Source: Octopus sinensis
Taxonomy: Eukaryota
Assembly: GCF_006345805.1 (NCBI RefSeq)
Contig: NC_043001.1
Span: 56,916,001-56,980,000, forward strand
DNA: 64,000 nt
Reading direction: 5' to 3'
Shown: positions 1-58,520 of the stretch, in pieces
How the letters are laid out: each line of letters starts with the position of its first letter
How positions within the stretch are numbered: the first letter of the stretch is position 1
Position numbers and translations under genes: made by a program
The notes under the pieces: generated by a model
The model's input: only the letters and a program-made list of their open reading frames with translations
Database searches by the model: none
Told to the model about the DNA's origin: nothing

Positions 1-3000
1 AACCAGACAGATGATCTGTTTATAGTGATCAAATGTTTGTGTTCACTCCCTCCTTCTTGCCTAACAACCAGATAGATGATCTGTTTATAGTGATCAGATG
101 CTTGTGTTAAACTCCATCCTTCTTGCCTAACAAACAGACAGATGATCTGTTTATAGTGATCAGATGTTTTGTGTTCACTCGCTCCTTCTTGCCTAACAAC
201 CAGACAGATGATCTGTTTATAGTGATCAGATGTTGTGTTCACTCCCTCCTTCTTGCCTAACAACCAGACAGATGATCTGTTTATAGTGATCAGATGTTTG
301 TGTTCACTCCCTCCTTCTTGCCTAACAACCAGACAGATGATCTTTTATAGTGATCAGAATGTTTGTGTTCACCTCCCTCCTTCTTGCCTAACAACCAGAC
401 AGATGATCTGTTTATAGTGATCAGATGTTTGTGTTCACTCCCTCCTCTTCTTGCCTAACAACCAGACAGATGATCTGTTTATAGTGATCAATGTTTGTGT
501 TCACTCCCTCCTTCTTGCCTAACAAACAGACAGATGATCTGTTTATAGTGATCAATTTTGTGTTCACTCCCCCTTCTTGCCTAACAACCAGACAGATGAT
601 CTGTTTATAGTGATCAGATGTTTGTGTTCACTCCCTCCTTCTTGCCTAACAACCAGACAGGTGTCTGTTTATAGTGATCAGATGTTTGTGTTCACTCCCT
701 CCTTCTTGCCTAACAACCAGACAGATGATCTGTTTATAGTGATCAAATGTTTGTGTTCACTCCCTCCTTCTTGCCTAACAACCAGACAGGTGATCTGTTT
801 ATAGTGATCAGATGCTTGTGTTCACTCCATCCTTCTTGCCTAACAACAGACAGATGATCTGTTTATAGTGATCAGATGTTTGTGTTCACTCCCTCCTTCT
901 TGCCTAACAAACAGACAGATGATCTGTTTATAGTGATCAGAAGTTGTGTTCACTCCCTCCTTCTTGCCTAACAACCAGACAGATGATCTGTTTATAGTGA
1001 TCAATGTTTGTGTTCACTCCCTCCTTCTTGCCTAACACCAGACAGATGATCTGTTTATAGTGATCAAATGTTTGTGTTCACTCCCTCCTTCTTGCTTAAC
1101 AACCAGACAGATGATCTGTTTATAGTGATCAGATGTTTGTGTTCACTCCCTCCTTCTTGCCTAACAACCAGACAGATGATCTGTTTATAGTGATCAAATG
1201 TTTGTGTTCACTCCCTCCTTCTTGCCTAACAACCAGACAGATGATCTGTTTATAGTGATCAAATGTTTGTGTTCACTCCCTCCTTCTTGCCTAACAACCA
1301 GACAGATGATCTGTTTATAGTGATCAGATGTTTGTGTTCACTCCCTCCTTCTTGCCTAACAACCAGACAGATGATCTGTTTATAGTGATCAGATGTTTGT
1401 GTTCACTCCCTCTTCTTGCCTAACAACCAGACAGATGATCTGTTTATAGTGATCAGATGTTTGTGTTCACTCGCTCCTTCTTGCCTAACAACCAGACAGA
1501 TGATCTGTTTATAGTGATCAGATGTTTGTGTTCACTCCCTCCTTCTTGCCTAACAACCAGACAGATGATCTGTTTATAGTGATCAGATGTTTGTGTTCAC
1601 TCCCTCCTTCTTGCCTAACAACCAGACAGATGATCTGTTTATAGTGATCAGATGTTTGTGTTCACTCCCTCCTTCTTGTCCTAACAACCAGACAGATGAT
1701 CTGTTTATAGCGATCAGATGTTTGTGTTCACTCCCTCCTTCTTGCCTAACAACAACCATGATCTGTAATAGTGATCAGATCCCCCCTCTGACACACCAGA
1801 CAGACACACACCCTCCTTCACCAAACCCAACAGACACCAAGATCAACCAAACCAGACAGATGATCTGTTTATAGTGATCAGATGTTTGTGTTCACTCCCT
1901 CCTTCTTGCCTAACAACCAGACAGATGATCTGTTTATAGTGATCAAATGTTTGTGTTCACTCCCTCCTTCTTGCCTAACAACCAGACAGATGATCTGTTT
2001 ATAGTGATCAGATGCTTGTGTTCACTCCATCCTTCTTGCCTAACAAACAGACAGATGATCTGTTTATAGTGATCAGATGTTTGTGTTCACTCCTCCTTCT
2101 TGCCTAACAACCAGACAGATGATCTGTTTATAGTGATCAGATGTTTGTGTTCACTCCCTCCTTCTTGCCTAACAACCAGACAGATGATCTGTTTATAGTG
2201 ATCAGATGTTTGTGTTCACTCCCTCCTTCTTGCCTAACAACCAGACAGATGATCTGTTTATAGTGATCAGATGTTTGTGTTCACTCCCTCCTTCTTGCCT
2301 AACAACCAGACAGATGATCTGTTTATAGTGATCAGATGTTTGTGTTCACTCCCTCCTTCTTGCCTAACAACCAGACAGATGATCTGTTTATAGTGATCAA
2401 ATGTGTGTTGTTCACTCCCTCCTTCTTGCCTAACAACCAGACAGATGATCTGTTTATAGTGATCAGATGTTTGTGTTCACTCCCTCCTTCTTGCCTAACA
2501 AACAGACAGATGATCTGTTTATAGTGATCAGAAGTTTGTGTTCACTCCCTCCTTCTTGCCTAACAACCAGACAGATGATCTGTTTATAGTGATCAGATGT
2601 TTGTGTTCACTCCCTCCTTTGCCGCCTAACAACATGACAGATGATCTGTTATAGTGATCAAATGTTTGTGTTCACTCCCTCCTTCTTGCTTAACAACCAG
2701 ACAGATGATCTGTTTATAGTGATCAGATGTTTGTGTTCACTCCCTCCTTCTTGCCTAACAACCAGACAGATGATCTGTTTTAGTGATCAGATGTTTGTGT
2801 TCACTCCCTCCTTCTTGCCTAACAACAGACAGATGATCTGTTTATAGTGATCAATGTTTGTGTTCACTCGCTCCTTCTTGCCTAACAACCAGACAGATGA
2901 TCTGTTTATAGTGATCAGATGTTGTGTTCACTCCCTCCTTCTTGCCTAACAACATGACAGATGATCTGTTTATAGTGATCAGATGTTTGTGTTCACTCCT

Positions 3001-6000
3001 CCTTCTTGTCTAACAACCAGACAGATGATCTGTTTATAGCGATCAGATGTTTGTGTCACTCCCTCCTTCTTGCCTAACAACCAGACAGATGATCTGTTTA
3101 TAGTGATCAGATGTTTGTGTTCACTCCTCCCTCCTTCTTGCCTAACAACCAGAGAGATGATTGTTTATAGTGATCAAATGTTTGTGTTCACTCCTCCTTC
3201 TTGCCTAACAACCAGACAGATGATCTGTTTATAGTGATCAGATGTTGTGTTCATCCCTCCTTCTTGCCTAACAACCAGACAGATGATCTGTTTATAGTGA
3301 TCAGATGTTGTGTTCACTCGCTCCTTCTTGCCTAACAACCAGACAGATGATCTGTTTATAGTGATCAAATGTTGTGTTCACTCCCTCCTTCTTGCCTAAC
3401 AACCAGACAGATGATCTGTTTATAGTGATCAGATGTTTGTGTTCACTCCCTCCTTCTTGCCTAACAACAGACAGATGATCTGTTTATAGTGATCAAGATT
3501 TTGTGTTCACTCCTCCTTCTTGCCTAACAACCAGACAGATGATCTGTTTATAGTGATCAGATGTTTGTGTTCACTCCCTCCTTCTTGCCAAACAACCAGA
3601 CAGATGATCTGTTTATAGTGATCAGATGTTTGTGTTCACTCCCTCCTTCTTGCCTAACAACCAGACAGATGATCTGTTTATAGTGATCAAATGTTGTGTT
3701 CACTCCCTCCTTCTTGCCTAACAAACAGACAGATGATCTGTTTATAGTGATCAGAAGTTTGTGTTCACTCCCTCCTTCTTGCCTAACAACCAGACAGATG
3801 ATCTGTTTATAGTGATCAGATGTTTGTGTTCACTCCCTCCTTCTTGCCTAACAACCAGACAGATGATCTGTTTATAGTGATCAGATGTTTGTGTTCACTC
3901 GCTCCTTCTTGCCTAACAACCAGACAGATGATCTGTTTATAGTGATCAGATGTTTGTGTTCACTCCCTCCTTCTTGCCTAACAACCAGACAGATGATCTG
4001 TTTATAGTGATCAGTTATTTGTGTTCACTCCCTCCTTCTTGCCTAACAACCAGACAGGTGTCTGTTTATAGTGATCAGATGTTTGTGTTCACTCCCTCCT
4101 TCTTGCCTAACAACATGACAGATGATCTGTTTATAGTGATCAAATGTTTGTGTTCACTCCCTCCTTCTTGCTTAACAACCAGACAGATGATCTGTTTATA
4201 GTGATCAGATGTTTGTGTTCACTCCCTCCTTCTTGCCTAACAACCAGACAGATGATGTTTATAGTGATCAGATGTTTGTGTTCACTCCCTCCTTCTTGCC
4301 TAACAACCAGACAGATGATCTGTTTATAGTGATCAAATTTGTGTTCACTCCCTCCTTCTTGCCTAACAACCAGACAGATGATCTGTTTATAGTGATCAAA
4401 TGTTTGTGTTCACTCCCTCCTTCTTGCCTAACAACCAGACAGATGATCTGTTTATAGTGATCAGATGTTTGTGTTCACTCCCTCCTCCTTGCCTAACAAC
4501 CAGACAGATGATCTGTTTATAGTGATCAGATGTTTGTGTTCACTCGCTCCTTCTTGCCTAACAACCAGACAGATGATCTGTTTATAGTGATCAGATGTTT
4601 GTGTTCACTCGCTCCTTCTTGCCTAACAACCAGACAGATGATCTGTTTATAGTGATCAGATGTTTGTGTTCACTCCCTCCTTCTTGCCTAACAACCAGAC
4701 AGATGATCTGTTTATAGTGATCAGATGTTTGTGTTCACTCCCTCCTTCTTTTCTAACAACCAGACAGATGATCTGTTTATAGTGATCAGAAGTTTGTGTT
4801 CACTCCCTCCTTCTTGCCTAACAACCAGACAGATGATCTGTTTATAGTGATCAGTTGTTTGTGTTCACTCCCTCCTTCTTGCCTAACAACCAGACAGATG
4901 ATCTGTTTATAGTGATCAGATGTTTGTGTTCACTCGCTCCTTCTTGCCTAACGACCAGACAGATGATCTGTTTATAGTGATCAGATGTTTGTGTTCACTC
5001 CCTCCTTCTTGCCTAACAACATGACAGATGATCTGTTTATAGTGATCAGATGTTTGTGTTCACTCCCTCCTTCTTGCCTAACAACCAGACAGGTGTCTGT
5101 TTATAGTGATCAGATGTTTGTGTTCACTCCCTCCTTCTTGCCTAACAACATGACAGATGATCTGTTTATAGTGATCAGATGTTTGTGTTTACTCCCTCCT
5201 TCTTGTCTAACAACCAGGCAGATGATCTGTTTATAGCGATCAGATGTTTGTGTTCACTCCCTCCTTCTTGCCTAACAACATGACAGATGATCTGTTTATA
5301 GTGATCAAAGTTTGTGTTCACTCCCTCCTTCTTGCCTAACAACAGACAGATGATCTGTTTATAGTGATCAGATGTTTGTGTTCACTCCCTCCTTCTTGCC
5401 TAACAACAGACAGATGATCTGTTTATAGTGATCAAATGTTTGTGTTCACTCCCTCCTTCTTGCCTAACAACCAGACAGATGATCTGTTTATAGTGATCAA
5501 ATGTTTGTGTTCACTCCCTCCTTCTTGCCTAACAACCAGACAGATGATCTGTTTATAGTGATCAGATGTTGTGTTCACTCCCTCCTCTTGCCTAACAACC
5601 AGACAGATGATCTGTTTATAGTGATCAGATGTTGTGTTCACTCGCTCCTTCTTGCCTAACAACCAGACAGATGATCTGTTTATAGTGCTCAGATGTTTGT
5701 GTTCACTCGCTCCTTCTTGCCTAACAACCAGACAGATGATCTGTTTATAGTGATCAGATGTTGTGTTCACTCCCTCCTTCTTGCCTAACAACCAGACAGA
5801 TAATCTGTTTATAGTGATCAGATGTTGTGTTCACTCCCTCCTTCCTGCTAACAACCAGACAGATGATCTGTTTATAGCGATCAGATGTTTGTGTTCACTC
5901 CCTCCTTCTTGCCTAACAACCAGACAGATGATCTGTTTATAGTGATCAGATGTTTGTGTTCACTCCCTCCTTCTTGCCTAACAACCAGACAGATGATCTG

Positions 6001-9000
6001 TTTATAGTGATCAAATGTTTGTGTTCACTCCCTCCTTCTTGCCTAACAACCAGATAGATGATCTGTTTATAGTGATCAGATGCTTGTGTTCACTCCATCC
6101 TTCTTGCCTAACAAACAGACAGATGATCTGTTTATAGTGATCAGATGTTTGTGTTCACTCGCTCCTTCTTGCCTAACAACCAGACAGATGATCTGTTTAT
6201 AGTGATCAGATGTTTGTGTTCACTCCCTCCTTCTTGCCTAACAACCAGACAGATGATCTGTTTATAGTGATCAGATGTTTGTGTTCACTCCCTCCTTCTT
6301 GCCTAACAACCAGACAGATGATCTGTTTATAGTGATCAAATGTTTGTGTTCACTCCCTCCTTCTTGCTTAACAACCAGACAGATGATCTGTTTATAGTGA
6401 TCAGATGTTTGTGTTCACTCCCTCCTTCTTGCCTAACAACCAGACAGATGATCTGTTTATAGTGATCAGATGTTTGTGTTCACTCCCTCCTTCTTGCCTA
6501 ACAACCAGACAGATGATCTGTTTATAGTGATCAAATGTTTGTTTTCACTCGCTCCTTCTTGCCTAACAACCAGACAGATGATCTGTTTATAGTGATCAGA
6601 TTTTTGTGTTCACTCCCTCCTTCTTGCCTAACAACATGACAGATGATCTGTTTATAGTGATCAGATGTTTGTGTTCACTCCCTCCTTCTTGTCTAACAAC
6701 CAGACAGATGATGTTTATAGCGATCAGATGTTTGTGTTCACTCCCTCCTTCTTGCCTAACAACCAGACAGATGATCTGTTTATAGTGATCAGATGTTTGT
6801 GTTCACTCCCTCCTTCTTGCCTAACAACCAGACAGATCATCTGTTTATAGTGATCAAATGTTTGTGTTCACTCCCTCCTTCTTGCCTAACAACCAGATAG
6901 ATGATCTGTTTATAGTGATCAGATGCTTGTGTTCAGTCCATCATTCTTGCCTAACAAACAGACAGATGATCTGTTTATAGTGATCAGATGCTTGTGTTCA
7001 CTCGCTCCTTCTTGCCTAACAACCAGACAGATGATCTGTTTATAGTGATCAAATGTTTGTGTTGTTCACCATCCTTCTTGCCTAACAACCAGACAGATGA
7101 TCTGTTTATAGTGATCAGATGTTTGTGTTCACTCCCTCCTTCTTGCCTAACAACCAGACAGATGATCTGTTTATAGTGATCAAATATTTGTGTTCACTCC
7201 CTCCTTCTTGCCTAACAACCAGACAGATGATCTGTTTATAGTGATCAGATGTTTGTGTTCACTCCCTCCTTCTTCTTGCCAACAACCAGACAGATGATCC
7301 TTTATAGTGATCAGATGTTTGTGTTCACTCCCTCCTTCTTGCCTAACAACCAGACAGATGATCTGTTTATAGTGATCAAATGTTTGTGTTCACTCCCTCC
7401 TTCTTGCCTAACAAACAGACAGATGATCTGTTTATAGTGATCAGAAGTTTGTGTTCACTCCCTCCTTCTTGCCTAACAACCAGACAGATGATCTGTTTAT
7501 AGTGATCAGATGTTTGTGTTCACTCCCTCCTTCTTGCCTAACAACCAGACAGATGATCTGTTTATAGTGATCAGATGTTTGTGTTCACTCGCTCCTTCTT
7601 GCCTAACGACCAGACAGATGATCTGTTTATAGTGATCAGATGTTTGTGTTCACTCCCTCCTTCTTGCCTAACAAACAGACAGATGATCTGTTTATAGTGA
7701 TCAGATGTTTGTGTTCACTCCCTCCTTCTTGCCTAACAACCAGACAGGTGTCTGTTTATAGTGATCAGATGTTTGTGTTCACTCCCTCCTTCTTGCCTAA
7801 CAACCAGACAGATGATCTGTTTATAGTGATCAATGTTTGTGTTCACTCCCTCCTTCTTGCCTAACAACCAGACAGGTGATCTGTTTATAGTGATCAGATG
7901 CTTGTGTTCACTCCATCCTTCTTGCCTAACAAATAGACAGATGATCTGTTTATAGTGATCAGATGTTTGTGTTCACTCCCTCCTTCTTCTTGCCTAACAA
8001 ACTGACAGATGATCTGTTATAGTGATCAGAAGTTTGTGTTCACTCCCTCCTTCTTGCCTAACAGCCAGACAGATGATCTGTTTATAGTGATCAGATGTTT
8101 GTGTTCACTCCCTCCTTCTTGCCTAACAACATGACAGATGATCTGTTTATAGTGATCAGATGTTTGTTCACACCTCCTCCTCTTGCCTAACAACCAGACA
8201 GATGATCTGTTTATAGTGATCAGATGTTTGTGTTCACTCCCTCCTTCTTGTCTAACAACCAGACAGATGATCTGTTTATAGCGATCAGATGTTTGTGTTC
8301 ACTCCCTCCTTCTTGCCTAACAACCAGACAGATGATCTGTTTATAGTGATCAGATGTTTGTGTTCACTCCCTCCTTCTTGCCTAACAACCAGACAGATGA
8401 TCTGTTTATAGTGATCAAATGTTTGTGTTCACTCCCTCCTTCTTGCCTAACAACCAGATAGATGATCTGTTTATAGTGATCAGATGCTTGTGTTCACTCC
8501 ATCCTTCTTGCCAACAACAGATGATCTGTTTATAGTGATCAGATGTTGTGTTCACTCGCTCCTTCTTGCCTAACAACCAGACAGATGATCTGTTTATAGT
8601 GATCAGATGTTTGTGTTCACTCCCTCCTTCTTGCCTAACAACCAGACAGATGATCTGTTTATAGTGATCAGATGTTTGTGTTCACTCCCTCCTTCTTGCC
8701 TAACCCAGACAGATGATCTGTTCATAGTGATCAAATGTTTGTGTTCACTCCCTCCTTCTTGCCTAACAACCAGACAGATCATCTGTTATAGTGATCAGAT
8801 GTTTGTGTTCACTCCCTCCTTCTTGCCTAACAACCAGACAGATGATCTGTTTATAGTGATCAGATGTTTGTGTTCACTCCCTCCTCTTCTTGCCTAACAA
8901 CCAGACAGATGATCTGTTTATAGTGATCAAATGTTTGTGTTCACTCCCTCCTTCTTGCCTAACAAGACAGATGATCTGTTTATAGTGATCAAAGTTTGTG

Positions 9001-12000
9001 TTCACTCCTCCTCCTCTTGCCTAACAACCAGACAGATGATCTGTTTATAGTGATCAGATGTTTGTGTTCACTCCCTCTTTCTTGCCTAACAACCAGACAG
9101 ATGATCTGTTTATAGTGATCAGATGTTTGTGTTCACTCGCTCCTTCTTGCCTAACAACCAGACAGATGATCTGTTTATAGTGATCAGATGTTTGTGTTCA
9201 CTCCCTCCTTCTTGCCTAACAACCAGACAGATGATCTGTTTATAGTGATCAGATGTTTGTGTTCACTCCCTCCTTCTTGTCTAACAACCAGACAGATGAT
9301 CTGTTTATAGCGATCAGATGTTTGTGTTCACTCCCTCCTTCTTGCCTAACAACCAGACAGATGATCTGTTTATAGTGATCAGATGTTTGTGTTCACTCCC
9401 TCCTTCTTGCCTAACAACCAGAGAGATGATCTGTTTATAGTGATCAAATGTTTGTGTTCACTCCCTCCTTCTTGCCTAACAACCAGATAGATGATCTGTT
9501 TATAGTGATCAGATGCTTGTGTTCAGTCCATCCTTCTTGCCTAACAACCAGACAGATGATCTGTTTTATAATGATCAGATGCTTTGTTCACTCGCTCCTT
9601 CTTGCCTAACAACCAGACAGATGATCTGTTTATAGTGATCAAATGTTTGTGTTCACTCCCTCCTTCTTGCCTAACAACCAGACAGATGATCTGTTTATAG
9701 TGATCAGATGTTTGTGTTCACCCTCCTTCTTTCTTGCCTAACAACCAGACAGATGATCTGTTTATAGTGATCAAATATTTGTGTTCACTCCCTCCTTCTT
9801 GCCTAACAACCAGACAGATCATCTGTTTATAGTGATCAGATGTTTGTGTTCACTCCCTCCTTCTTGCCTAACAACCAGACAGATGATCTGTTTATAGTGA
9901 TCAGATGTTTGTGTTCACTCCCTCCTTCTTGCCTAACAACCAGACAGATGATCTGTTTATAGTGATCAAATGTTTGTGTTCACTCCCTCCTTCTTGCCTA
10001 ACAAACAGACAGATGATCTGTTTATAGTGATCAGAAGTTTGTGTTCACTCCCTCCTTCTTGCCTAACAACCAGACAGATGATCTGTTTATAGTGATCAGA
10101 TGTTTGTGTTCACTCCCTCCTTCTTGCCTAACAACGAGGCAGATGATCTGTTTATAGTGATCAGATGTTTGTGTTCACTCGCTCCTTCATGCCTAACGAC
10201 CAGACAGATGATCTGTTTATAGTGATCAGATGTTTGTGTTCACTCCCTCCTTCTTGCCTAACAACCAGACAGATGATCTGTTTATAGTGATCAGATGTTT
10301 GTGTTCACTCCCTCCTTCTTGCCTAACAACCAGACAGGTGTCTGTTTATAGTGATCAGATGTTTGTGTTCACTCCCTCCTTCTTGCCTAACAACCAGACA
10401 GATGATCTGTTTATAGTGATCAAATTTTGTGTCACTCCCTCCTTCTTGCCTAACAACCAGACAGGTGATCTGTTTATAGTGATCAGATGCTTGCGTTCAC
10501 TCCATCCTTCTTACCTAACAAACAGACAGATGATCTGTTTATAGTGATCACATGTTTGTGTTCACTCCCTCCTTCTTGCCTAACAAACAGACAGATGATC
10601 TGTTTATAGTGATCAAATGTTTGTGTTCACTCCCTCCTTCTTGCCTAACAACCAGACAGATGATCTGTTTATAGTGATCAGATGTTTGTGTTCACTCCCT
10701 CCTTCTTGCTTAACAACATGACAGATGATCTGTTTATAGTGATCAAATGTTTGTGTTCACTCCCTCCTTCTTGCTTAACAACCAGACAGATGATCTGTTT
10801 ATAGTGATCAGATGTTTGTGTTCACTCCCTCCTTCTTGCCTAACAACCAGACAGATGATCTGTTTATAGTGATCAGATGTTTGTTTTCACTCCCTCCTTC
10901 TTGCCTAACAACCAGACAGATGATCTGTTTATAGTGATTAGATGTTTGTGTTCACTCCCTCCTTCTTGCCTAACAACCAGACAGGTGTCTGTTTATAGTA
11001 ATCAGATGTTTGTGTTCACTCCCTCCTTCTTGCCTAACAACCAGACAGATGATCTGTTTATAGTGATCAAATGTTTGTGTTCACTCCCTCCTTCTTGCCT
11101 AACAACCAGACAGGTGATCTGTTTATAGTGATCAGATGCTTGTTTTCACTCCATCCTTCTTGCCTAACAAACAGACAGATGATCTGTTTATAGTGATCAG
11201 ATGTTGTGTTCACTCCCTCCTTCTTGCCTAACAAAAGACAGATGATCTGTTATAGTGATCAGAAGTTTGTGTTCACTCCCTCCTTCTTGCCTAACAACCA
11301 GACAGATGATCTGTTTATAGTGATCAGATGTTTGTGTTCACTCCCTCCTTCTTGCCTAACATGACAGATGATCTGAGTCTGTTTATAGTGATCAAATGTT
11401 TGTGTTCACTCCCTCCTTCTTGCTTAACAACCAGACAGATGATCTGTTTATAGTGATCAGATGTTTGTGTTCACTCCCTCCTTCTTGCCTAACAACCAGA
11501 CAGATGATCTGTTTATAGTGATCAGATGTTTGTGTTCACTCCCTCCTTCTTGCCTAACAACCAGACAGATGATCTGTTTATAGTGATCAAATGTTTGTGT
11601 TCACTCCCTCCTTCTTGCCTAACAACCAGACAGATGATCTGTTTATAGTGATCAAATGTTTGTGTTCACTCCCTCCTTTTTGCCTAACAACCAGACAGAT
11701 GATCTGTTTATAGTGATCAGATGTTTGTGTTCACTCCCTCCTCCTTGCCTAACAACCAGACAGATGATCTGTTTATAGTGATCAGATGTTTGTGTTCACT
11801 CCCTCCTTCTTGCCTAACAACCAGACAGATGATCTGTTTATAGTGATCAGGATGTTTGTGTTCACTCCTCCTTCTTGCCTAACAACCAGACAGATGATCT
11901 GTTTATAGTGATCAAATGTTTGTGTTCACTCCCTCCTTCTTTCCTAACAACCAGACAGATGATCTGTTTATAGTGATCAGATGTTTGTGTTCACTCCCTC

Positions 12001-15000
12001 CTTCTTGCCTAACAACATGACAGATGATCTGTTTATAGTGATCAAATGTTTGTGTTCACTCCCTCCTTCTTGCTTAACAACCAGACAGATGATCTGTTTA
12101 TAGTGATCAGATGTTTGTGTTCACTCCCTCCTTCTTGCCTAACAACCAGACAGATGATCTGTTTATAGTGATCAGATGTTTGTGTTCACTCCCTCCTTCT
12201 TGCCTAACAACCAGACAGATGATCTGTTTATAGTGATCAAATGTTTGTGTTCACTCCCTCCTTCTTGCCTAACAACCAGATAGATGATCTGTTTATAGTG
12301 ATCAGATGCTTGTGTTCAGTCCATCCTTCTTGCCTAACAAACAGACAGATGATCTGTTTATAATGATCAGATGCTTGTGTTCACTCGCTCCTTCTTGCCT
12401 AACAACCAGACAGATGATCTGTTTATAGTGATCAAATGTTTGTGTTCACTCCCTCCTTCTTGCCTAACAACCAGACAGATGATCTGTTTATAGTGATCAG
12501 ATGTTTGTGTTCACTCCCTCCTTCTTGCCTAACAACCAGACAGATGATCTGTTTATAGTGATCAAATATTTGTGTTCACTCCCTCCTTCTTGCCTAACAA
12601 CCAGACAGATCATCTGTTTATAGTGATCAGATGTTTGTGTTCACTCCCTCCTTCTTGCCTAACAACCAGACAGATGATCTGTTTATAGTGATCAGATGTT
12701 TGTGTTCACTCCCTCTTTCTTGCCTAACAACCAGACAGATGATCTGTTTATAGTGATCAAATGTTTGTGTTCACTCCCTCCTTCTTGCCTAACAAACAGA
12801 CAGATGATCTGTTTATAGTGATCAGAAGTTTGTGTTCACTCCCTCCTTCTTCCCTAACAACCAGACAGATGATCTGTTTATAGTGATCAGATGTTTGTGT
12901 TCACTCCCTCCTTCTTGCCTAACAACCAGACAGATGATCTGTTTATAGTGATCAGATGTTTGTGTTCACTCGCTCCTTCATGCCTAACGACCAGACAGAT
13001 GATCTGTTTATAGTGATCAGATGTTTGTGTTCACTCCCTCCTTCTTGCCTAACAACCAGACAGATGATCTGTTTATAGTGATCAGATGTTTGTGTTCACT
13101 CCCTCCTTCTTGCCTAACAACCAGACAGATGATCTGTTTATAGTGATCAGATGCTTGTGTTCACTCGCTCCTTCTTGCCTAACGACCAGACAGATGATCT
13201 GTTTATAGTGATCAAATGTTGTGTTCACTCCCTCCTTCTTGCCTAACAACCAGACAGATGATCTGTTTATAGTGATCAGATTGTTTGTGTTCACTCCCTC
13301 CTTCTTGCTTAACAACCAGACATGTGATCTGTTTATAGTGATCAGATGTGTTTGTGTTCACTCCCTCCTTCTTGCCTAACAACCAGACAGGTGGTGATTG
13401 TTTATAGTGAGCAGATGTTTGTGTTCACTGCCTCCTTCTGCCCTAACAACCAGACAGATGATCTGTTTATAGTGATCAGATGTTTGTGTTCACTCCCTCC
13501 TTCTTGCCTAACAACCAGACAGATGATCTGTTTATAGTGATCAGATGTTTGTGTTCACTCGCTCCTTCTTGCCTAACGACCAGACAGATGATCTGTTTAT
13601 AGTGATCAGATGTTTGTGTTCACTCTCCTCCTTGCCTAACAACCAGACAGATGATCTGTTTATAGTGATCAGATGTTTGTGTTCACTCGCTCCTACTTGC
13701 CTAACAACACAGACAGGTGTCTGTTATAGTGATCAGATGTTGTGTTCACTCCCTCCTTCTTGCCTAACAACCAGACAGATGATCTGTTTATAGTGATCAA
13801 ATGTTTGTGTTCACTCCCTCCTTCTTGCCTAACAACCAGACAGGTGATCTGTTTATAGTGATCAGATGCTTGTGTTCACTCATCCTTCTTGCCTAACAAA
13901 CAGAACAGATGATCTGTTTATAGTGATCAGATGTTTGTGTTCACTCCCTCCTTTTGCCTAACAAACAGACAGATGATCTGTTTATAGTGATCAGAAGTTT
14001 GTGTTCACTCCCTCCTTCTTGCCTAACAACAGACAGAAGATCTGTTATAGTGATCAGATGTTTGGTTCACTCCCTCCTTCTTGCCTAACAACCAGACAAT
14101 GATCTGTTTATAGTGATCAGATGTTTGTGTTCACTCCCTCCTTCTTGCCTAACAACCAGACAGATGATCTGTTTATAGTGATCAGATGTTTGTGTTCACT
14201 CCCTCCTTCTTGCCTAAAACCAGACAGATGATCTGTTTATAGTGATCAAATGTTTGTGTTCACTCCCTCCTTCTTGCCTAACAACCAGACAGATGATCTG
14301 TTTATAGTGATCAGATGTTTGTGTTCACTCCCTCCTTCTTGCCTAACAACCAGACAGATGATCTGTTTATAGTGATCAGATGTTTGTGTTCACTCCCTCC
14401 TTCTTGCCTAACAACCAGACAGGTGTCTGTTTATAGTGATCAGATGTTTGTGTTCACTCCCTCCTTCTTGCCTAACAACCAGACAGATGATCTGTTATAG
14501 TGATCAAATGTTTGTGTTCACTCCCTCCTTCTTGCCTAACAACCAGACAGGTGATCTGTTATAGTGATCAGATGCTTGTTTTCACTCCATCCTTCTTGCC
14601 TAACAAACAGACAGATGATCTGTTTATAGTGATCAGATGTTTGTGTTCACTCCCTCCTTCTTGCCTAACAAACAGACAGATGATCTGTTTATAGTGATCA
14701 GAAGTTTGTGTTCACTCCCTCCTTCTTGCCTAACAACCAGACAGATGATCTGTTTATAGTGATCAGATGTTTGTGTTCACTCCCTCCTTCTTGCCTAACA
14801 ACATGACAGATGATCTGTTTATAGTGATCAAATGTTTGTGTTCACTCCCTCCTTCTTGCTTAACAACCAGACAGATGATCTGTTTATAGTGATCAGATGT
14901 TTGTGTTCACTCCCTCCTTCTTGCCTAACAACCAGACAGATGATCTGTTTATAGTGATCAGATGTTTGTGTTCACTCCCTCCTTCTTGCCTAACAACAGA

Positions 15001-16170
15001 CAGATGATCTGTTTATAGTGATCAAATGTTTGTGTTCACTCCCTCCTTCTTGCCTAACAACCAGACAGATGATCTGTTTATAGTGATCAAATGTTTGTGT
15101 TCACTCCCTCCTTTTGCCTAAAACCAGACAGATGATCTGTTTATAGTGATCAGATGTGTTTGTGTTCACTCCCTCCTTCTTGTTGCCTAACAACCAGACA
15201 GATGATCTGTTTATAGTGATCAGATGTTTGTGTTCACTCCCTCTTCTCTCCCATCACTGCTTTGCCTAACAACCCGACAGATGATCTGTTTATAGTAGTG
15301 TCAGATGTTTGTGTTCACTCGCTCCTTCTTGCCTAACAACCAGACAGATGATCTGTTTATAGTGATCAGATGTTTGTGTTCACTCCCTACTTCTTGCCTA
15401 ACGACCAGACAGATGATCTGTTTATAGTGATCAAATGTTTGTGTTCACTCCCTCCTTCTTGCCTAACAACCAGACAGATGATCTGTTTATAGTGATCAGA
15501 TGTTTGTGTTCACTCCCTCCTTCTTGCTTAACAACCAGACATGTGATCTGTTTATAGTGATCAGATGTTTGTGTTCACTCCCTCCTTCTTGCCTAACAAC
15601 CAGACAGGTGATCTGTTTATAGTGATCAGATGTTTGTGTTCACTGCCTCCTTCTTGCCTAACAACCAGACAGATGATCTGTTTATAGTGATCAGATGTTT
15701 GTGTTCACTCCCTCCTTCTTGCTTAACAACCAGACAGATGATCTGTTTATAGTGATCAGATGTTTGTGTTCACTCGCTCCTTCTTGCCTAACAACCAGAC
15801 AGATGATCTGTTTATAGTGATCAGATGTTTGTGTTCACTCGCTCCTTCTTGCCTAACAACCAGACAGATGATCTGTTTATAGTGATCAAATGTTTGTGTT
15901 CACTCCCTCCTTCTTGCCTAACAACCAGACAGGTGATCTGTTTATAGTGATCAGATGTTTGTGTTCACTCCCTCTTTCTTGCCTAACAACCAGACAGATG
16001 ATCTCTTTATAGTGATCAAATGTTTGTGTTCACTCCCTCCTTCTTGCCTAACAACCAGACAGATGATCTGTTTATAGTGATCAGATGTTTGTGTTCACTC
16101 CATCCTTCTTGCCTAACAACCAGACAGATGATCTGTTTACAGTTATTAAATGTTTGAGTTCACTCCCTCC
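1..16170. repeat. 65-bp tandem satellite array, about 250 copies visible, continuing beyond the window start
   Basis: Consensus AACCAGACAGATGATCTGTTTATAGTGATCAGATGTTTGTGTTCACTCCCTCCTTCTTGCCTAAC repeats head-to-tail (unit starts at 1 and 66). 65 is not a multiple of 3 and all frames hit stops, so the ORFs here are artefacts. The last unit (about 16118-16170) is diverged. Confidence 0.99.
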
Positions 16171-16349
16171 GTCAAATCAAGATTACTTGCACAGGTGCAC
16201 CATATCCCACATGTCAGATGACGAAATGATTGCAGAGCAACTTGGAATGAAGTGCTTTACTCAAGAACACTACGCAACGCCGGGTCTGGGAATGGAACCT
16301 ACGATCTCGCAATCAGGAGTGTAACACCCACTAAGCCATGCGCCTTCAC
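16171..16349 (-). mobile_element. tRNA-derived SINE head and body, contiguous with the satellite
   Basis: The minus strand reads GTGAAGGCGCA-TGGCTTAGTGG (A box, 16338-16328), then GGTTCCATTCC (B box with one mismatch, 16299-16289), then GTGTTCTTGAGTAAAGCACTTCATTCCAAGTTGCTC. That last motif also occurs in the SINE at 58270-58520. Confidence 0.85.
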
Positions 16350-16779
16350 ATAAAATGTGTGTGTGTGTGTATGTGTGTGTGTATGTGACTGTGTGTACGT
16401 GTGTATACATGTTCATTTGTGTGTATGTGTGTATGTGTGTGCATGATAAGTTTTTGATTTAAGTAGGATAAGATAGTGCAGACATCGTGCAGAGAGAGCA
16501 TATCACGCATGAGATGGCAAAGAGTGGGGAATGCATTTGGACAAACATAGTGAATTGATTCATTGACAGAACGATTAACCGACTAATCAAACAATCGATC
16601 ATTGAATGGGTTAAATGGATGAGCAATCTACTTATAATAATAAAAGAAATGATACAGGACCACTGCATGTGGCTCTTATTAGTATAATGGTTATTGTAAT
16701 AGCTGTTCGGAGATATATCAAAAGAAATATGTACGTATTCATTTTATATGTGCATATAGACATATATAATACATACATA

Positions 16780-39271: not shown

Positions 39272-40070
39272 ATCAACATAGATGACTTAGTCAACCAGCA
39301 TGTGACGTTTGAAGAAGACTTATCAAACATGTGGAGTTTGAACAATATCACTCAGTTAATAGAAAAACCGTTAAAAGTACCATCAAGAGATTTCATTACC
39401 TTCGTGCGACCAGGTCAGCGGATCCGTTTCAAGAAGATCAAGAAACTTCCTGAGAAAAATGAAAAGTGGAACGGCTATTGGGAGGTAACTGCAGATTTAC
39501 CTGGGTGCCAGGTTTTCTTTCCCATCCCAGTTTCGAAAAAACCAGATATTTTGATGTGGTGTGAAAGAAAGAAAGTTGTAAATATAGTCGAGCTAACGGT
39601 TCCTCATGAAGATAATATGGACGCCACTCGGGCTCGAAAATTGAACCGTTATGAAAATCTCCTCGAGGAATGTGAAGACGCAGGCTGGAAAGCGGAACAT
39701 TTTCCTATCGAAGTCGGATGTAGAGGGTTTGTTGGATACAGCGTGAGACGACTGTTGTTATCGATAGGCTTAACTCATCGTAAAGTCAATACCACCATGA
39801 CTGATATCCAATCTACAGTGGAGAAAGCTAGCCACTGGATTTGGTTAAAAAGAGACGATGGGCGATGGCTAGAAGTATATTGAATTCTTCATAACCAGCT
39901 GATCTAGCAAGCGGGGCCTCATATCAGTGAGGGGGGCCGGTGTGCATTGATGCTGTCGAGAGGTAGGCCCCGAAACGGCGCGCATTTTCTCCTGATGACC
40001 CCATACACTTGCTAGCTTCCGGTATACGGAGCTTTTAACTGGTAGCACTTGCATGTGCAAATTGTTTGCA
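39272..40070 (+). mobile_element. 5'-truncated HERO/NeSL-like (R2-group) LINE: open restriction-like endonuclease domain and 3' UTR
   Basis: ORF 39302-39883 contains KPDILMW...IVELTVPHEDNM...RKLNRY...GW...PIEVGCRGF...EKASHWIWLKR, the PD..E...K/Y RLE signature typical of HERO elements. A GC-richer structured 3' UTR follows. Confidence 0.85.
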
Positions 40071-42003: not shown

Positions 42004-43268
42004 TGAGCGGTGTTCATTAAAAGTTTCCCCTGACCCACTTCCCAAGGACACACATAAACAAAACTTGGCATAGTTATTTGTCCTTCTCTACAAAGCCACT
42101 ACCAATGGTAACAAGCCTCACCCATCATTTTATGCTGCTGTGAAGATCTCGTTTGTAAAAGTTGGTAGGTTATGTCTGGAGCTAAGACTTTACTTCGGAA
42201 ATTCTTCACCATCCGAAAAGTGCTTCTTTATGAAAAAAGAATTCATGGTCCGAAAAAGGTGGCAGTGAGATAGGGACGAGGTTGAGAGAGTAAGGGGTAT
42301 GAAGAAGGATTTCATAACCGCAGGAGTGTGCTTCCATATGGGCAACATGCGTATTGCGAGCTGGGGCGTTGTCATAGAGGAGGTGGTCTCCTTTGGTCAG
42401 CATGCCACGCCTCTCTGTCTTGATGGCGTCCCGCAATTTCTGCAGCAGAGAAGCATAATATGTCCCGTTAATTGTGGTTCCCTTTACCAGCTACTACGAG
42501 CTGGTCTCAAAAGACTGTGAGCTCACCTTGCTTGCTGAGAGTTGGACACGAGCCATCTTTGGAGTTGGTGAGTTATCATGCTTCTATTGCTTCGACTAGT
42601 CTGTAGTCTTAGAGTCATAATGATAGACTCATGTTTCATTAGTTTGCCAAAAATGCCCTTGTTTTGTTGGCACATTGTGAAAAGAGCTTGTGAGTAATTG
42701 ACTCGTTCCTGTTTCTGAAAAGATGTGAACCTGCGGAGAATCCATCGTGCAGACAGCTTCCGCATGTGCAAATGGTCGTGAGTGATTTTTTTGCACGGAC
42801 TCTACACTTATCTTCATTTCTTAGACTAGTTGCCGAATAATTATGTGGCTATCCCCCAAAATGTCGGATTCTACTTTCTGGATGGTGTCGTCATCAATGA
42901 TGGAAAGTGGATGTCCAGGACTAGGAGCAGTTTCTACCGATGTCTGACCACATTTGAACTGGCGCTGCGAGAGCTTGACTATGTCGTATGAAAGTGCATC
43001 GTCACCATAAACTTCTTTCATCTCATCGAAGGTCTCTTTTAGTGTACAACCTTTCAAGTATAAGAACCTGATCATTGATCTGCATTGAACTGCCTCCATT
43101 ATATAACACCATAGTGCACTTCAACAGCCGTAAAAAGCAAATGAATACTAGTGGAAAGCTGCAATTTACAATGAGACATGTAAAGACATGTTTAATTTTA
43201 CCTATACAAGTTCCGTTTCCTGCAATATCCGGAACTGGTCAAGGGAAATGTTTAATAAACACCCTTCG
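42004..43268 (-). mobile_element. Near full-length decayed mariner (DD34D) element
   Basis: TIRs TGAGCGGTGTTCATTAAAAGTTTCCCCTGACC and GGTCAAGGGAAATGTTTAATAAACACCCTTCG-TA. Fragments MEAVQCRSMIRFLYLKG (HTH), KLSARWILR, LLYDNAPA and HTPYSLNLVP (YSPDLAP). Confidence 0.92.
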
Positions 43269-46177: not shown

Positions 46178-47417
46178 TTAGGTCGTCAAGTATGAAATTA
46201 GTAGAAAAGAATAGGTTTATTCATCAAAGTATGCACCCATATTGTCAATACACTTTTGTCATTTCAGCAGTAAAAGCCCGGCATACTAGAATCATTAAAA
46301 TCTTGGAAGGCCTGTTTTGCAGCATCGTCGGAATTAATTTTTTTCCTATCAAAAAGTTATCCAAGTTATGGAAGAAGTGGTAGTCAGTGTGTGTGTGTGA
46401 GGATGGGGGGCAAGATCAGGTGAGTATGGTGGATGATGGAGAACTTTCAACACCAATTCCTGAAGTTTCGCCAATGTATTTTTGCGATGTGTGGTCTGGC
46501 GTTGCCTTGCAATAAAATAGCAGTGGATCAGTTGACTAATCTAGGCAGTTTTTTTTTGTAAATTTCTGCATCATTTGGTCCAGTTGTCTGCAGTACACTT
46601 CAATCGTGATTGATGAACCAGGTTTAATGAAATCATTATGGCTCACACCTGCGCCAAACTACCAAACACACATCATCAGCTTCTTTTGATGAATTTTGCC
46701 TTTTGGACTGTGTTTTACTGGCTCGTCTTTGTCCAACCATTGTGATGAACGTTTGTGGTTGTTGTATTGGATCCATTCCTCATCACATATTACAATTCGA
46801 TTCAGAAATGATTCATTATTCTGACGAGAAAGTAGCATAAATAAGTCTTCCAAACGTTGTTGTTTCTGATTTTGATTGAGCTCATGTGGAACCCACTTAT
46901 CCAACTTTTTCCCTTTACCGATATGAAGAAGTGAGTCAATATTATTTGCTTGCTAACACGAATCAACGATAATTCACTCGGACATTGAAATGGATCTGAC
47001 TCGACGGTGGCTTTTAGTTCGTCATTATCCACCTTTTTTTCTGGTCGACCGCGTTGCTCAGTTGTGAGGTGAAAGTTACCAAAGCGAAATTTTGCAAAGC
47101 ATTTTGATACTGTCTGGTGTGTAATAACATTCGAAGGAAATACTCCAGGAATATTCCGAGCTGTCTTTGATGCTGTATTTCTAAGAAAGAACTCATATTT
47201 CAAAACTGTATGAATATCCGACTTATCCATATTCAAACAAAAATAGCAAAAAATGATTTATAAATAATTTATAAAGCTCAAAATGAGTTAGAATAAAAAA
47301 ATAGATGTATCAGCTTTCTAAAAAAACTAAAGATTCTCAAAATATAATAATGGCGCAAAATGAGCAGCTGTCAAAGTTTACCATATACCGTACAACAAAT
47401 TTCATATTTGACGAACA
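46178..47417 (-). mobile_element. Near full-length decayed mariner (Hsmar1/mellifera-like) element
   Basis: TIRs TTAGGTCGTCAAGTATGAAATT and AATTTCATATTTGACGAACA-TA. Fragments MDKSDIHTVLKYEF...RGRPEKKVDNDELKATVESDP, DKWVPHEL, FLNRIVICDEEWIQYNNHKRSSQW and KIHQKKLMMCVW. Confidence 0.93.
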
Positions 47418-55350: not shown

Positions 55351-55597
55351 GGGTGCTTCAAAACAATTCATATAATTTCGCAATCTAATTACTTGATCAA
55401 ATGACTTAAAATTTTAACAGCATATGTAGAAACAGGTGTAGGAATGGCTGTGTGGTAAGTAGCTTGCTTACCAACCACATGGTTCTGGGTTCAGTCCCAC
55501 TGCATGGAACCTTGGGCAAGTGACTTCTACTATAGCCTCGGGCCGACCAAAGCCTTGTGAGTGGATCTGTTAGACGGGAACTGAAAGAATCCGGTCG

Positions 55598-55643
<46 letters not shown>

Positions 55644-55970: not shown

Positions 55971-56232
55971 AAACGTATGAATTTTGTTTGCGGACTTTAA
56001 TTCATCGGAATCTAATTCGCCCGCTAATGGTCTCCAAAGTTAGCGAAAACTCTACTCCGCTAAACATAAAGTTAGCTGTTAGCAGATTAGCGGAACCGTG
56101 CTCACCACTGTACATACTTATACACATACATACGCACACACACACACACATGTACATGCACACGCACACACACTCACACACACATATGTATGTGTATATA
56201 TATATGTATATCTTTCAATCTATATCTATTTA

Positions 56233-56271
<39 letters not shown>

Positions 56272-56302
56272 TATATATAATATATATAATATATATATAT
56301 AT

Positions 56303-56334
<32 letters not shown>

Positions 56335-56364: not shown

Positions 56365-56890
56365 ATCTACTTTCTGCTCACGAGCTATGGCCATGCTGGG
56401 GGCACCGCCATTTGGTGTTGCTATATGATTTCACTTCACGAATGCTTTTTAGCAATTGCCATTTGGTGCATGAGAGAGTTCGATGCAGCTGCCCTCATCT
56501 GCACCTCCTGCCGTGAAGTTGGTTCGTCTGGGACACCTGACAAGAAGAGATCCAGTTTTATTTTAAAGTCATCTGCATCCACCCCATGCAGGTCTCTTAG
56601 GTTCTTCGGGAGGATATTGAAGAGCTGTGGGTCTCGGAAGCCCACGCTATCACAATATCTCGTCCTACATCTTGATGGCAAATTTGGAGTCCTTGGCACT
56701 ATGCAGTGGCGCCCAGTTCTGACATTTGTGTAACTGTCGATGCCAAAGTTTGGGTCAAGTCCTTCTAGGATCTTCCAGACGTATATTGTGGCATATCTTT
56801 CTCGCCTACGCTCTAAGGAATAGAGTTTCAATCTCTTGAGTCTTTCCCAATAGCTTATATGCTGAACAGATGCTATCTTCTTCGTGTAGC
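56365..56890 (-). mobile_element. 3' end of a CR1/L2-group LINE, 5'-truncated
   Basis: Open frame ISYWERLKRLKLYSLERRRERYATIYVWKILEGL...QLFNILP...FKIKLDLFLSGVPDEP...NSL, typical of the post-RT C-terminus. The tail GGCGGTGCCCCCAGCATGGCC follows. Confidence 0.85.
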
Positions 56891-56901
56891 TTCGATGGAT
56901 G

Positions 56902-56947
<46 letters not shown>

Positions 56948-56953
<6 letters not shown>

Positions 56954-57117
56954 CATACAAACATACATACATACATACATACATACATACATACATACAT
57001 ACATACATACATACACATACATACATACATACATACATACATACATACATACATACATACATACATACATACATACATACATACATACACATACATACAT
57101 ACATACATACATACACA

Positions 57118-57149
<32 letters not shown>

Positions 57150-57162
57150 CATACATACATAC
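56948..57162. repeat. (CATA)n microsatellite
   Basis: Direct reading. Confidence 0.95.
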
Positions 57163-57345
57163 ACGCAAATACAAATACACACGTAGCAATTCCCTGACAC
57201 ATGTCCTTTATTAATTTTACTGTTGGGTCACAGTCTTAACAGTTGTATATAATTATATAGAAATCGCAACTGGACTGATACTTATTAAATCAATTTCAGA
57301 CGGATGTTAATCAATGGCAACGTTCGTGGACTTTTTAGAATTCGA

Positions 57346-58172: not shown

Positions 58173-58175
<3 letters not shown>
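57401..58175 (+). mobile_element. Decayed bipartite tRNA-SINE carrying a nested SINE
   Basis: Head module 57401-57472 resumes at 57707-57770. A (TA)/(TG) tract follows, then the 3' module GTTTGTCTCCCACCACCGCTTGACAA...TGAAACAAGTAAA. Confidence 0.75.
57473..57706 (-). mobile_element. Full-length tRNA-SINE with a 17-bp target-site duplication
   Basis: The minus strand reads AGGCGGCGAGCTGGTAGAAACG...GAGTTCAAATTCC (B box)...TTTCATCCTTTCGGGGTCGATAAATTAAGTACC. TSD AACTGTCTTCCAATATA at 57456-57472 and 57707-57723. Confidence 0.92.
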
Positions 58176-58251
<76 letters not shown>

Positions 58252-58269
58252 ACACACACACACACATAT

Positions 58270-58520
58270 ATATAAGAGTGTAAGGTCCTTCCCAAACCGT
58301 TGGCTCATTAGGTCGGTTTTCTTGCAAACTGTGGTGCATATTATTAACCCGGGGCGGGATGTCATTTCGTCACAGGATTACTCATTTTTAACATTTGAAT
58401 GGGCTGAAGCTACGTGAAAGGAAGTGTTTTGCGCGAGAGTTCAATGTATTTGCCCGGCGCGGGAAACGAACCACAAAATTTGCGATCATGTGTTTGACAC
58501 CCTTAGACACTATGCACCTA
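58270..58520 (-). mobile_element. Decayed tRNA-SINE sharing its head with the 16171-16349 element but with a different body
   Basis: The minus strand reads GGTTCGTTTCCC (B box)...AAAACACTTCCTTTCACGTAGCTTCAGCCCATTCAAATGTTAAAAATGAGTAATCC. Confidence 0.7.

What the first reader, a model, noticed from the sequence alone, without database searches (positions are those of the whole stretch)
1..16349. A 16-kb or longer satellite that appears to be an amplified internal segment of a SINE, still attached to its Pol III head
Seen: on the minus strand a tRNA-like head (A box 16338-16328, B box 16299-16289) and about 120 nt of SINE body run directly into GGAGGGAGTGAACTCAAAC... at 16170. That is a slightly diverged first monomer, followed by about 250 homogenised 65-bp monomers, with no spacer or TSD at the junction. 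From memory, unverified: an Octopus SINE body contains GGAGGGAGTGAGC...ACAAACATTTGATCACTATAAACAAATCA...GGCAAGAA, which is essentially this monomer. Inference: a single SINE insertion seeded a macrosatellite by tandem amplification of a 65-bp internal window, leaving the founder promoter at the array edge.
Basis: partly seen in the sequence, partly recalled or inferred. Interest (0 to 1): 0.78.

Follow-up and report, generated by a model that had tools for sequence, protein, structure and literature searches.

The report
65-bp satellite abutting a truncated SINE
A tandem array of about 250 copies of a 65-base unit, at least 16 kb long, starts directly inside an old mobile element (a SINE) that keeps its front end; the array may have grown out of that element, as in some reptiles, but the test that would decide this could not be run here.

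Summary
Window 1-16170 is one head-to-tail array of 249 monomers of 65 bp. Mean identity to the consensus is 96%, and the array runs off the window start. On the minus strand it directly abuts 179 nt (16349-16171) that carry the only A-box/B-box pair in the 64 kb, plus a CORE-like SINE domain. There is no spacer. Only the first monomer is diverged.

The interpretation, that a 65-bp internal SINE segment was amplified in situ, is plausible. It has the architecture of the SINE-derived satellites described in squamates: an array ending in a longer terminal unit that reaches the SINE terminus. Its key link is that dispersed copies of this SINE contain the monomer, and I could not test that. No collection I could reach holds this genome or a close relative. 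The 47.6 kb outside the array contains three other SINE copies of other families and no monomer-like segment above chance.

The head is decayed: no tRNA model recognises it, so a working Pol III promoter is not shown.

I give about 0.5 to a SINE-seeded satellite and about 0.33 to an unrelated satellite that truncates a SINE by chance. If confirmed, it would be a new member of a known kind. Interest is moderate.

The parts
1..16105 (-). Homogenised 65-bp satellite array: monomers 2-249 plus a partial monomer cut by the window start.
   Evidence: TRF; segmentation and consensus. There are 134 distinct monomer sequences, and the consensus sequence itself occurs 47 times. The consensus has no CpG.
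16106..16170 (-). Monomer 1, the diverged edge monomer: GGAGGGAGTGAACTCAAACATTTAATAACTGTAAACAGATCATCTGTCTGGTTGTTAGGCAAGAA.
   Evidence: It differs from the consensus at 5 positions, all within positions 14-31. Positions 32-65 are identical to the consensus.
16171..16202 (-). SINE body 3' of the CORE-like domain (TGGTGCACCTGTGCAAGTAATCTTGATTTGAC), ending at the junction with the array.
   Evidence: No significant similarity to the monomer or to the 3' part of the other CORE-type SINE.
16203..16273 (-). CORE-like central domain of the SINE (GTGTTCTTGAGTAAAGCACTT...TTTCGTCATCTGACATGTGGGATA).
   Evidence: The region 3' of the B box was aligned locally to the matching region of the MIR consensus: z=4.6, and 6 of 2000 shuffles reach the score. 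Only a 36-nt stretch of it was checked against a paper (PMC6344866). That checked 36-mer matches fewer than 19 of 36 positions without gaps here, and gives nhmmer E=28.
16274..16349 (-). Decayed tRNA-box head: A box at 16338-16328, B box at 16299-16289, 28 nt between the boxes.
   Evidence: the only A-B pair in the window; no tRNA model match and no cloverleaf. The 5' end was placed by alignment to the second SINE.
16356..16441 (.). Imperfect (CA)n/(TG)n microsatellite immediately 5' of the SINE. This is flanking sequence, not part of the element.
   Evidence: TRF; sequence. No second copy of the 13 nt that span the SINE's 5' end (CACATTTTATGTG, 16347-16359) occurs in the visible part of the array, so no target-site duplication is visible.
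1741..1850 (-). Aberrant patch inside the array: about 70 nt of G/T-rich sequence (1781-1850) followed by a shortened monomer.
   Evidence: monomers 222-224 are 43-71% identical to the consensus.

Best explanation
This is a SINE-seeded satellite. A CORE-type, tRNA-box SINE inserted next to a (CA)n microsatellite. A roughly 65-bp stretch lying 3' of its CORE domain was then duplicated in tandem. That stretch was either the SINE's own 3' region or its 3' end plus tail and flank. Unequal exchange and gene conversion, partly in multi-monomer blocks of about 2.6-2.8 kb, expanded it to at least 16 kb and kept it homogeneous.

The SINE's 5' 179 nt stayed behind as a longer terminal unit. Monomer 1 has non-homologous DNA on one side, so it escaped homogenisation in the half nearest the flank.

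Shown: the array, the SINE nature of the flank, the spacer-free junction, the divergence confined to the edge monomer, and the block duplications. Inferred: that the monomer was once part of this SINE, and the order of events. There is no evidence that the array is transcribed or that the head is still a working Pol III promoter.
For: 1. The junction has no spacer, and the SINE has an intact 5' end but lacks its 3' region, tail and target-site duplication. Retroposition usually truncates 5' ends. A missing 3' end therefore points to a later event whose boundary coincides with the array edge.
2. The 179 nt are SINE-derived: A and B boxes, homology to a second SINE and a CORE-like domain. At 179 nt the element is shorter than the other CORE-type copy in the window, which is about 240 nt before its tail. 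A missing 3' part of about 60 nt or more is therefore of the right size.
3. [quoted passage not shown]
4. Only monomer 1 is diverged, and only in its flank-proximal half. Block duplications at lags of about 40 and 43 monomers show growth by unequal exchange.
5. My own rough Bayesian estimate: SINEs cover about 2% of the rest of this window and 1.8% of the O. bimaculoides genome (PMC6279123). A chance array edge inside a SINE is therefore uncommon.
Against: No sequence evidence links the monomer to any SINE. It shows nothing above shuffled controls against the pre-array SINE body, the second CORE-type SINE, two copies of another SINE family, a MIR consensus, or the remaining 47.6 kb. There is no other copy of this SINE family in the window to compare with. 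The far end of the array is outside the window. Edge-monomer divergence is expected under any origin.
Confidence: 0.5

Rival explanations
1. The satellite is unrelated to the SINE. A 65-bp satellite that arose elsewhere or from non-SINE sequence was inserted into an ordinary old SINE copy, or expanded into it, or was recombined next to it. That event removed or displaced the SINE's 3' part, so the adjacency is a coincidence.
For: The monomer has no detectable similarity to any SINE sequence in the window or to a MIR consensus. The head is decayed, so the SINE copy may be old while the array is highly homogeneous. SINEs and simple repeats are frequent in this sequence, so chance adjacency is possible.
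Against: It needs an array edge to fall inside the roughly 2% of sequence that is SINE. It does not explain why the junction has no filler. Published SINE-derived satellites have exactly this terminal architecture.
Confidence: 0.33
2. The repeats belong to the mobile element itself. In this reading the 65-bp units are a native, variable-number part of this SINE-like element, as in SVA-type composite elements or the Squam SINE copies with internal duplications. Many loci would then share head, body and repeats, and this locus would be one hyper-expanded copy rather than the founder.
For: SINE copies with a few or many internal tandem duplications, grading into satellites, are described in PMC10702118. 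The junction here is seamless.
Against: No second copy with even one monomer occurs in 47.6 kb. A 16-kb array is far beyond what can be retrotransposed as a SINE.
Confidence: 0.1
3. Assembly artefact. In this reading the junction at 16170/16171 is a misjoin between a collapsed or expanded satellite contig and unique sequence.
For: Long satellite arrays are error-prone in assemblies. The array reaches the window edge, and there is an aberrant G/T-rich patch at 1781-1850.
Against: Monomer 1 is an intermediate, uniquely diverged monomer in perfect register with the array, as expected at a natural array edge. There are 134 distinct monomer variants and block-duplication structure, which looks like real sequence and not a collapsed consensus.
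Confidence: 0.05

Closest known systems
SINE-derived satellites (sSats) of squamate reptiles (Vassetzky, Kosushkin & Ryskov 2023, Mob DNA; PMC10702118)
   Same: Both are head-to-tail arrays of a short unit, up to about 1000 units. Each ends in a longer terminal unit that continues to a SINE terminus. Homogeneity increases in long arrays. The SINEs involved are tRNA-related with a head, body and LINE-derived-region layout.
   Different: In squamates the unit was shown to match the dispersed SINE consensus (Squam1, 2 and 3). Here that match is untested. The host here is an invertebrate, probably an octopod by my recollection of its SINEs only. The SINE is CORE-type and the unit is 65 bp. The paper's authors say they do not know whether such satellites exist outside squamates.
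CORE-SINE superfamily (MIR and others; octopus OR1/OR2 of Ohshima & Okada 1994, as cited in PMC4824008 and PMC4758252)
   Same: A tRNA-box head followed by a central domain that aligns colinearly with the MIR core (GTG..CTTG.G.AA...CACTT....TTTC.TCATCTG.A.ATG.GGATA).
   Different: The copy lacks the 3' LINE-related region and the tail. The head has lost its tRNA fold. I could not compare it with the OR1/OR2 sequences, which are not held by any tool.
Amphibian Pol III/tRNA-related tandem repeats (PolIII/TAN, OAX, Rana/polIII, Hy/polIII), as reviewed in PMC10702118
   Same: Tandem repeats associated with Pol III box sequences.
   Different: In those families the tRNA-like segment lies inside every repeat unit. 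Here the boxes occur once, outside the array, and the 65-bp unit has no boxes.
Ordinary satellite DNA evolving by unequal exchange
   Same: A long homogeneous array, a diverged edge monomer, and multi-monomer block duplications.
   Different: There is no short-period higher-order repeat. Chromosomal position and copy number in the genome are unknown.

Membership tests
tRNA-derived SINE | Internal Pol III promoter: A box and B box at tRNA-like spacing | tested here: met
   TGGCTTAGTGG and GGTTCCATTCC with a 28-nt gap. This is the only such pair in 64 kb on either strand. The B box has C at the purine position.
tRNA-derived SINE | Head recognisably similar to a tRNA (cloverleaf) | tested here: not met
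   ARAGORN finds nothing at default, 90%, 80% or 70% thresholds. Rfam finds no tRNA at E<=10. The minimum-energy fold is not a cloverleaf, z=+0.68.
tRNA-derived SINE | Dispersed related copies in the genome | tested here: inconclusive
   There is one distant relative in the window, at 58522-58283 on the minus strand, with head plus core homology at nhmmer E=1.8e-5. No copy of the same family is present.
tRNA-derived SINE | 3' LINE-related region, simple-repeat or A-rich tail, and target-site duplication | tested here: not met
   The element ends at 16171 against the array, with no tail. No repeat of the 13 nt spanning the SINE's 5' end occurs in the visible array. These features could lie beyond the window start.
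CORE-SINE superfamily | Conserved central CORE domain of about 60-65 bp, 3' of the head | tested here: inconclusive
   The region 3' of the B box aligns colinearly with the MIR core: z=4.6, and 6 of 2000 shuffles reach the score. The 36 nt of it that I checked in PMC6344866 match this copy only weakly on their own (nhmmer E=28; fewer than 19 of 36 positions without gaps).
SINE-derived satellite (sSat) | Long head-to-tail array of a short unit | tested here: met
   249 units of 65 bp.
SINE-derived satellite (sSat) | Terminal unit extended into SINE sequence up to a SINE terminus | tested here: met
   The array abuts 179 nt that reach the SINE 5' end, with no spacer.
SINE-derived satellite (sSat) | Repeat unit homologous to a region of the dispersed SINE consensus | not testable with these tools
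   No copy of this SINE family or of this genome is in any collection. In the window, the unit matches none of three other SINE copies, which belong to other families.
SINE-derived satellite (sSat) | Several loci, preferentially subtelomeric | not testable with these tools
   Only this window is available.

The most novel reading that the evidence does not exclude
This would be the first SINE-derived macrosatellite outside squamates, in a cephalopod, caught with its founder element still attached. In addition, the founder's A/B-box head would still fire. The sense strand has no run of four or more T for about 1.2 kb after the head. Pol III would therefore read into the array and produce satellite RNA from a SINE promoter. 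That would be a built-in way for a satellite to be transcribed.
Probability: 0.08. Interest if true: 0.65.

Novelty: new member of a known kind. Interest (0 to 1): 0.4.

Why it matters
Direct links between interspersed and tandem repeats are scarce. [quoted passage not shown] A cephalopod locus with the SINE 5' part still attached to an array of at least 16 kb would extend the phenomenon to invertebrates. It would also give a clean case for studying how a satellite is born: the first duplication, growth in blocks, and the edge monomer escaping homogenisation. If the adjacency is a coincidence, this is an ordinary satellite with an ordinary truncated SINE beside it.

Tried and rejected
- **Protein route to related DNA.** The SINE-side ORF and a 119-aa satellite ORF have no homologues among 5.8 billion proteins. 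Exact look-ups of a 193-aa transposable-element ORF and of the 40-aa consensus satellite ORF found nothing. A full HMMER search with the 79-aa ORF that spans the junction gave two spurious hits to repeat proteins.
- **The 193-aa ORF (39302-39883).** Its homologues are at most 64% identical over the aligned part, and 58-59% for the best-scoring hits. Six contigs that carry them (L001-L006, from three ENA samples) have 33-48% G+C. None contains these SINEs or the monomer, so they come from other organisms.
- **DNA pattern scans.** I scanned for a conserved 24-mer of the monomer and for a degenerate SINE-head pattern in the viral, genome and metagenome collections. All six scans returned nothing.
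- **Literature.** No paper in the library prints any of the monomer or SINE strings. No paper describes an octopus or cephalopod satellite or a SINE-derived satellite there. The MIR consensus strings were found only for one 36-nt stretch. The octopus genome paper is not held.
- **Monomer against a MIR consensus.** An apparent extension of the SINE-to-MIR alignment into monomer 1 did not survive testing. Monomer 1 against MIR gives z=1.4, and the consensus monomer gives z=-0.5.
- **Monomer against the 3' half of the other SINE family (50075-49691).** This was marginal: z=2.3, with 32 of 1000 shuffles reaching the score. nhmmer did not support it, so I rejected it.
- **Colinear continuation test against the second CORE-type SINE.** No signal, and the native monomer phase ranks 15th of 65 phases.
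- **Rfam on the window.** Only microsatellite-driven sub-threshold 'miRNA' matches appeared, and nothing reached a gathering score.
- **Short-period higher-order repeat.** None; pairwise identity is flat at all lags.
Full report
**1. What is there**

Tandem Repeats Finder reports a single array at 1-16170 with period 65, 248.8 copies, 92% matches and score 27526. I segmented it on the minus strand into 249 monomers plus a partial monomer cut by the window start. Of these, 168 are exactly 65 bp. Mean identity to the consensus is 0.96. The consensus is GGAGGGAGTGAACACAAACATCTGATCACTATAAACAGATCATCTGTCTGGTTGTTAGGCAAGAA.

The array continues beyond the window, so 16 kb is a minimum length. The consensus has no CpG, one TGATCA and two GATC sites. 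The array is 41% G+C and strand-asymmetric, against about 35% G+C for the rest of the window.

**2. Structure inside the array**

Pairwise identity is flat at about 93.5% at all lags from 1 to 200 monomers, so there is no short-period higher-order repeat. Shared derived variants reveal block duplications at lags of about 40 and about 43 monomers, or 2.6-2.8 kb. This is the signature of unequal exchange in multi-monomer register.

There are 134 distinct monomer sequences, and the exact consensus occurs 47 times. One G/T-rich aberrant patch of about 70 nt sits at 1781-1850.

**3. The junction**

On the minus strand the sequence reads ...GTGCAAGTAATCTTGATTTGAC|GGAGGGAGTGAACTCAAACATTTAATAACTG..., with the break at 16171|16170 and no spacer. 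Monomer 1 differs from the consensus at 5 positions, all within positions 14-31, the half nearer the flank. Positions 32-65 are identical to the consensus. Monomer 2 already has a single difference. The edge is therefore sharp, and only the terminal unit escaped homogenisation.

**4. The 179 nt at 16349-16171**

The A box TGGCTTAGTGG (16338-16328) and the B box GGTTCCATTCC (16299-16289) form the only A-B pair on either strand of the 64 kb. I estimate about 0.01 such pairs by chance.

nhmmer finds one related sequence in the window, at about 58522-58283 on the minus strand, with E=1.8e-5. It is a SINE with a similar head and central part and a (TG)n tail. A two-sequence profile finds only these two copies.

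The region 3' of the B box aligns colinearly with the CORE domain of MIR: z=4.6, with 6 of 2000 shuffles reaching the score. A 36-nt stretch of it is confirmed by an oligonucleotide printed in PMC6344866. On its own, that stretch matches this copy only weakly.

The head is decayed. ARAGORN finds no tRNA even at 70% thresholds, Rfam finds no tRNA at E<=10, and there is no cloverleaf.

I conclude that this is a real but old SINE copy of CORE type. Its 5' end is intact and it has no 3' region, tail or visible target-site duplication.

**5. Context**

The remaining 47.6 kb is 15.4% simple repeats, close to the 14.7% reported for Octopus minor. It holds two copies of a different tRNA-head SINE, at 55437-55600 on the plus strand and 50070-49700 on the minus strand. 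From memory I recognise this as the abundant octopod SINE.

It also holds mariner HTH_48 remnants, a LINE reverse-transcriptase C-terminal ORF, and a 193-aa transposable-element ORF. An octopod origin is therefore likely but was not tested.

**6. The key claim: the monomer is a piece of the SINE**

This needs dispersed copies of the same family or the far end of the array. Neither is reachable. No collection holds this genome or a near relative. The evidence is:
- protein searches;
- exact look-ups;
- DNA pattern scans;
- contigs of the nearest protein hits, which are other organisms;
- the paper library, which prints none of these strings.

Inside the window I compared the monomer, as a dimer so that any phase could match, with the following:
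- the pre-array SINE body (z=-1.2);
- the second CORE-type SINE (z=-0.6);
- the 3' part of that SINE in a colinear, end-anchored test (z=-0.6, with the native phase ranked 15th of 65);
- the two copies of the other SINE family (z=2.3 and z=-1.0);
- a MIR consensus (z=-0.5; z=1.4 for monomer 1);
- the whole remaining window, by Smith-Waterman and by nhmmer.

Nothing exceeds shuffled controls. These are other SINE families, so the claim is not refuted. It has no sequence support.

**7. Weighing the readings**

Three things favour SINE seeding.
- The element has lost its 3' end and kept its 5' end. This is the opposite of what retroposition produces, and the loss coincides exactly with the array edge.
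- SINEs cover only about 2% of the surrounding sequence, and 1.8% of the O. bimaculoides genome. A chance array edge inside a SINE is therefore uncommon.

Against it stand the absence of any monomer-to-SINE similarity and the possibility of coincidence. A rough Bayesian estimate of my own gives 0.3-0.8 for seeding. It assumes a prior of 5-15% that a satellite in a SINE-bearing genome is SINE-born, a 60% chance that such a locus keeps its terminal SINE, and a 2-8% chance of adjacency otherwise. I put the readings at about 0.5 for a SINE-seeded satellite, 0.33 for coincidental adjacency, 0.1 for a composite element and 0.05 for a misjoin.

**8. How it most likely works**

After insertion of the SINE, a first tandem duplication of about 65 bp occurred 3' of the CORE domain. 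Unequal exchange and conversion then expanded and homogenised the array. Growth in blocks is shown; the rest of this sequence of events is inferred.

The terminal unit has non-homologous DNA on its left. It could be converted only in its distal half, which fits the position of its five private differences (shown).

Whether the head still drives Pol III is unknown. The boxes are near consensus and the sense strand has no T4 run until 15123, about 1.2 kb downstream. However, the tRNA fold is gone and the B box has a pyrimidine at the purine position.

**9. Novelty**

If confirmed, this is a new member of a known kind, a SINE-derived satellite, in a new phylum and from a CORE-type SINE. The library holds no report of such a satellite in cephalopods, and no report of any cephalopod satellite. 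If it is not confirmed, it is an ordinary satellite next to a truncated SINE.

Noticed in passing
window 58283-58522 (minus strand), tail 58174-58266: A second CORE-type, tRNA-box SINE of about 240 nt with a (TG)n tail and (GT)n on its 5' side. Its head and core are homologous to the SINE at 16349-16171. Its 3' part is unrelated and contains no monomer-like segment.
   Followed up: yes
window 55437-55600 (plus strand) and 50070-49700 (minus strand): Two copies of a different tRNA-head SINE family (GGCTGTGTGGTAAGTAGCTTGCTT...CCTTGGGCAAGTG.CTTCTACTATAGCCTCGGG...). It has an internal (TA/TG)n microsatellite, and the 50-kb copy has a long 3' half. From memory this is the abundant octopod SINE, which suggests the window comes from an octopod. 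These copies give the window's best matches to the literature-verified MIR core 36-mer.
   Followed up: partly
window 1781-1850: A G/T-rich patch of about 70 nt replaces roughly one monomer inside the otherwise regular array and is followed by a shortened monomer. Its origin is unknown: a small insertion, a hypermutated unit, or an assembly or sequencing problem.
   Followed up: no
window array, about monomers 83-108 versus 123-148 (lag 40) and 48-62 versus 91-105 (lag 43): Runs of shared private variants show that blocks of about 2.6-2.8 kb were duplicated within the array.
   Followed up: partly
window 39302-39883 (plus strand): A 193-aa ORF with 64 homologues in eukaryote-derived contigs, at most 64% identical (58-59% for the best-scoring hits). 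One homologue is an uncharacterised Clytia hemisphaerica protein. There is no Pfam domain. On related contigs it sits next to reverse-transcriptase and endonuclease genes, so it is probably part of a retroelement.
   Followed up: partly
window 42821-43099 (minus strand) and 46802-47236 (minus strand): Two ORFs with the Mos1-type HTH_48 domain, which are remnants of mariner-like transposases.
   Followed up: no
window 56436-56900 (minus strand): An ORF whose C-terminal part looks like the end of a LINE reverse transcriptase (...WERLKRLKLYSLERRRERY...). On the plus strand it lies between an (AT)n tract at 56184-56334 and an (ATAC)n tract at 56907-57163. There is no Pfam hit.
   Followed up: no
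window 16350-64000: 15.4% of the sequence is tandem repeats of period 6 or less, including (TATG)n, (AC)n, (AT)n, (CAT)n and (GAA)n. This produces hundreds of sub-threshold Rfam 'miRNA' matches that are artefacts of the microsatellites.
   Followed up: yes
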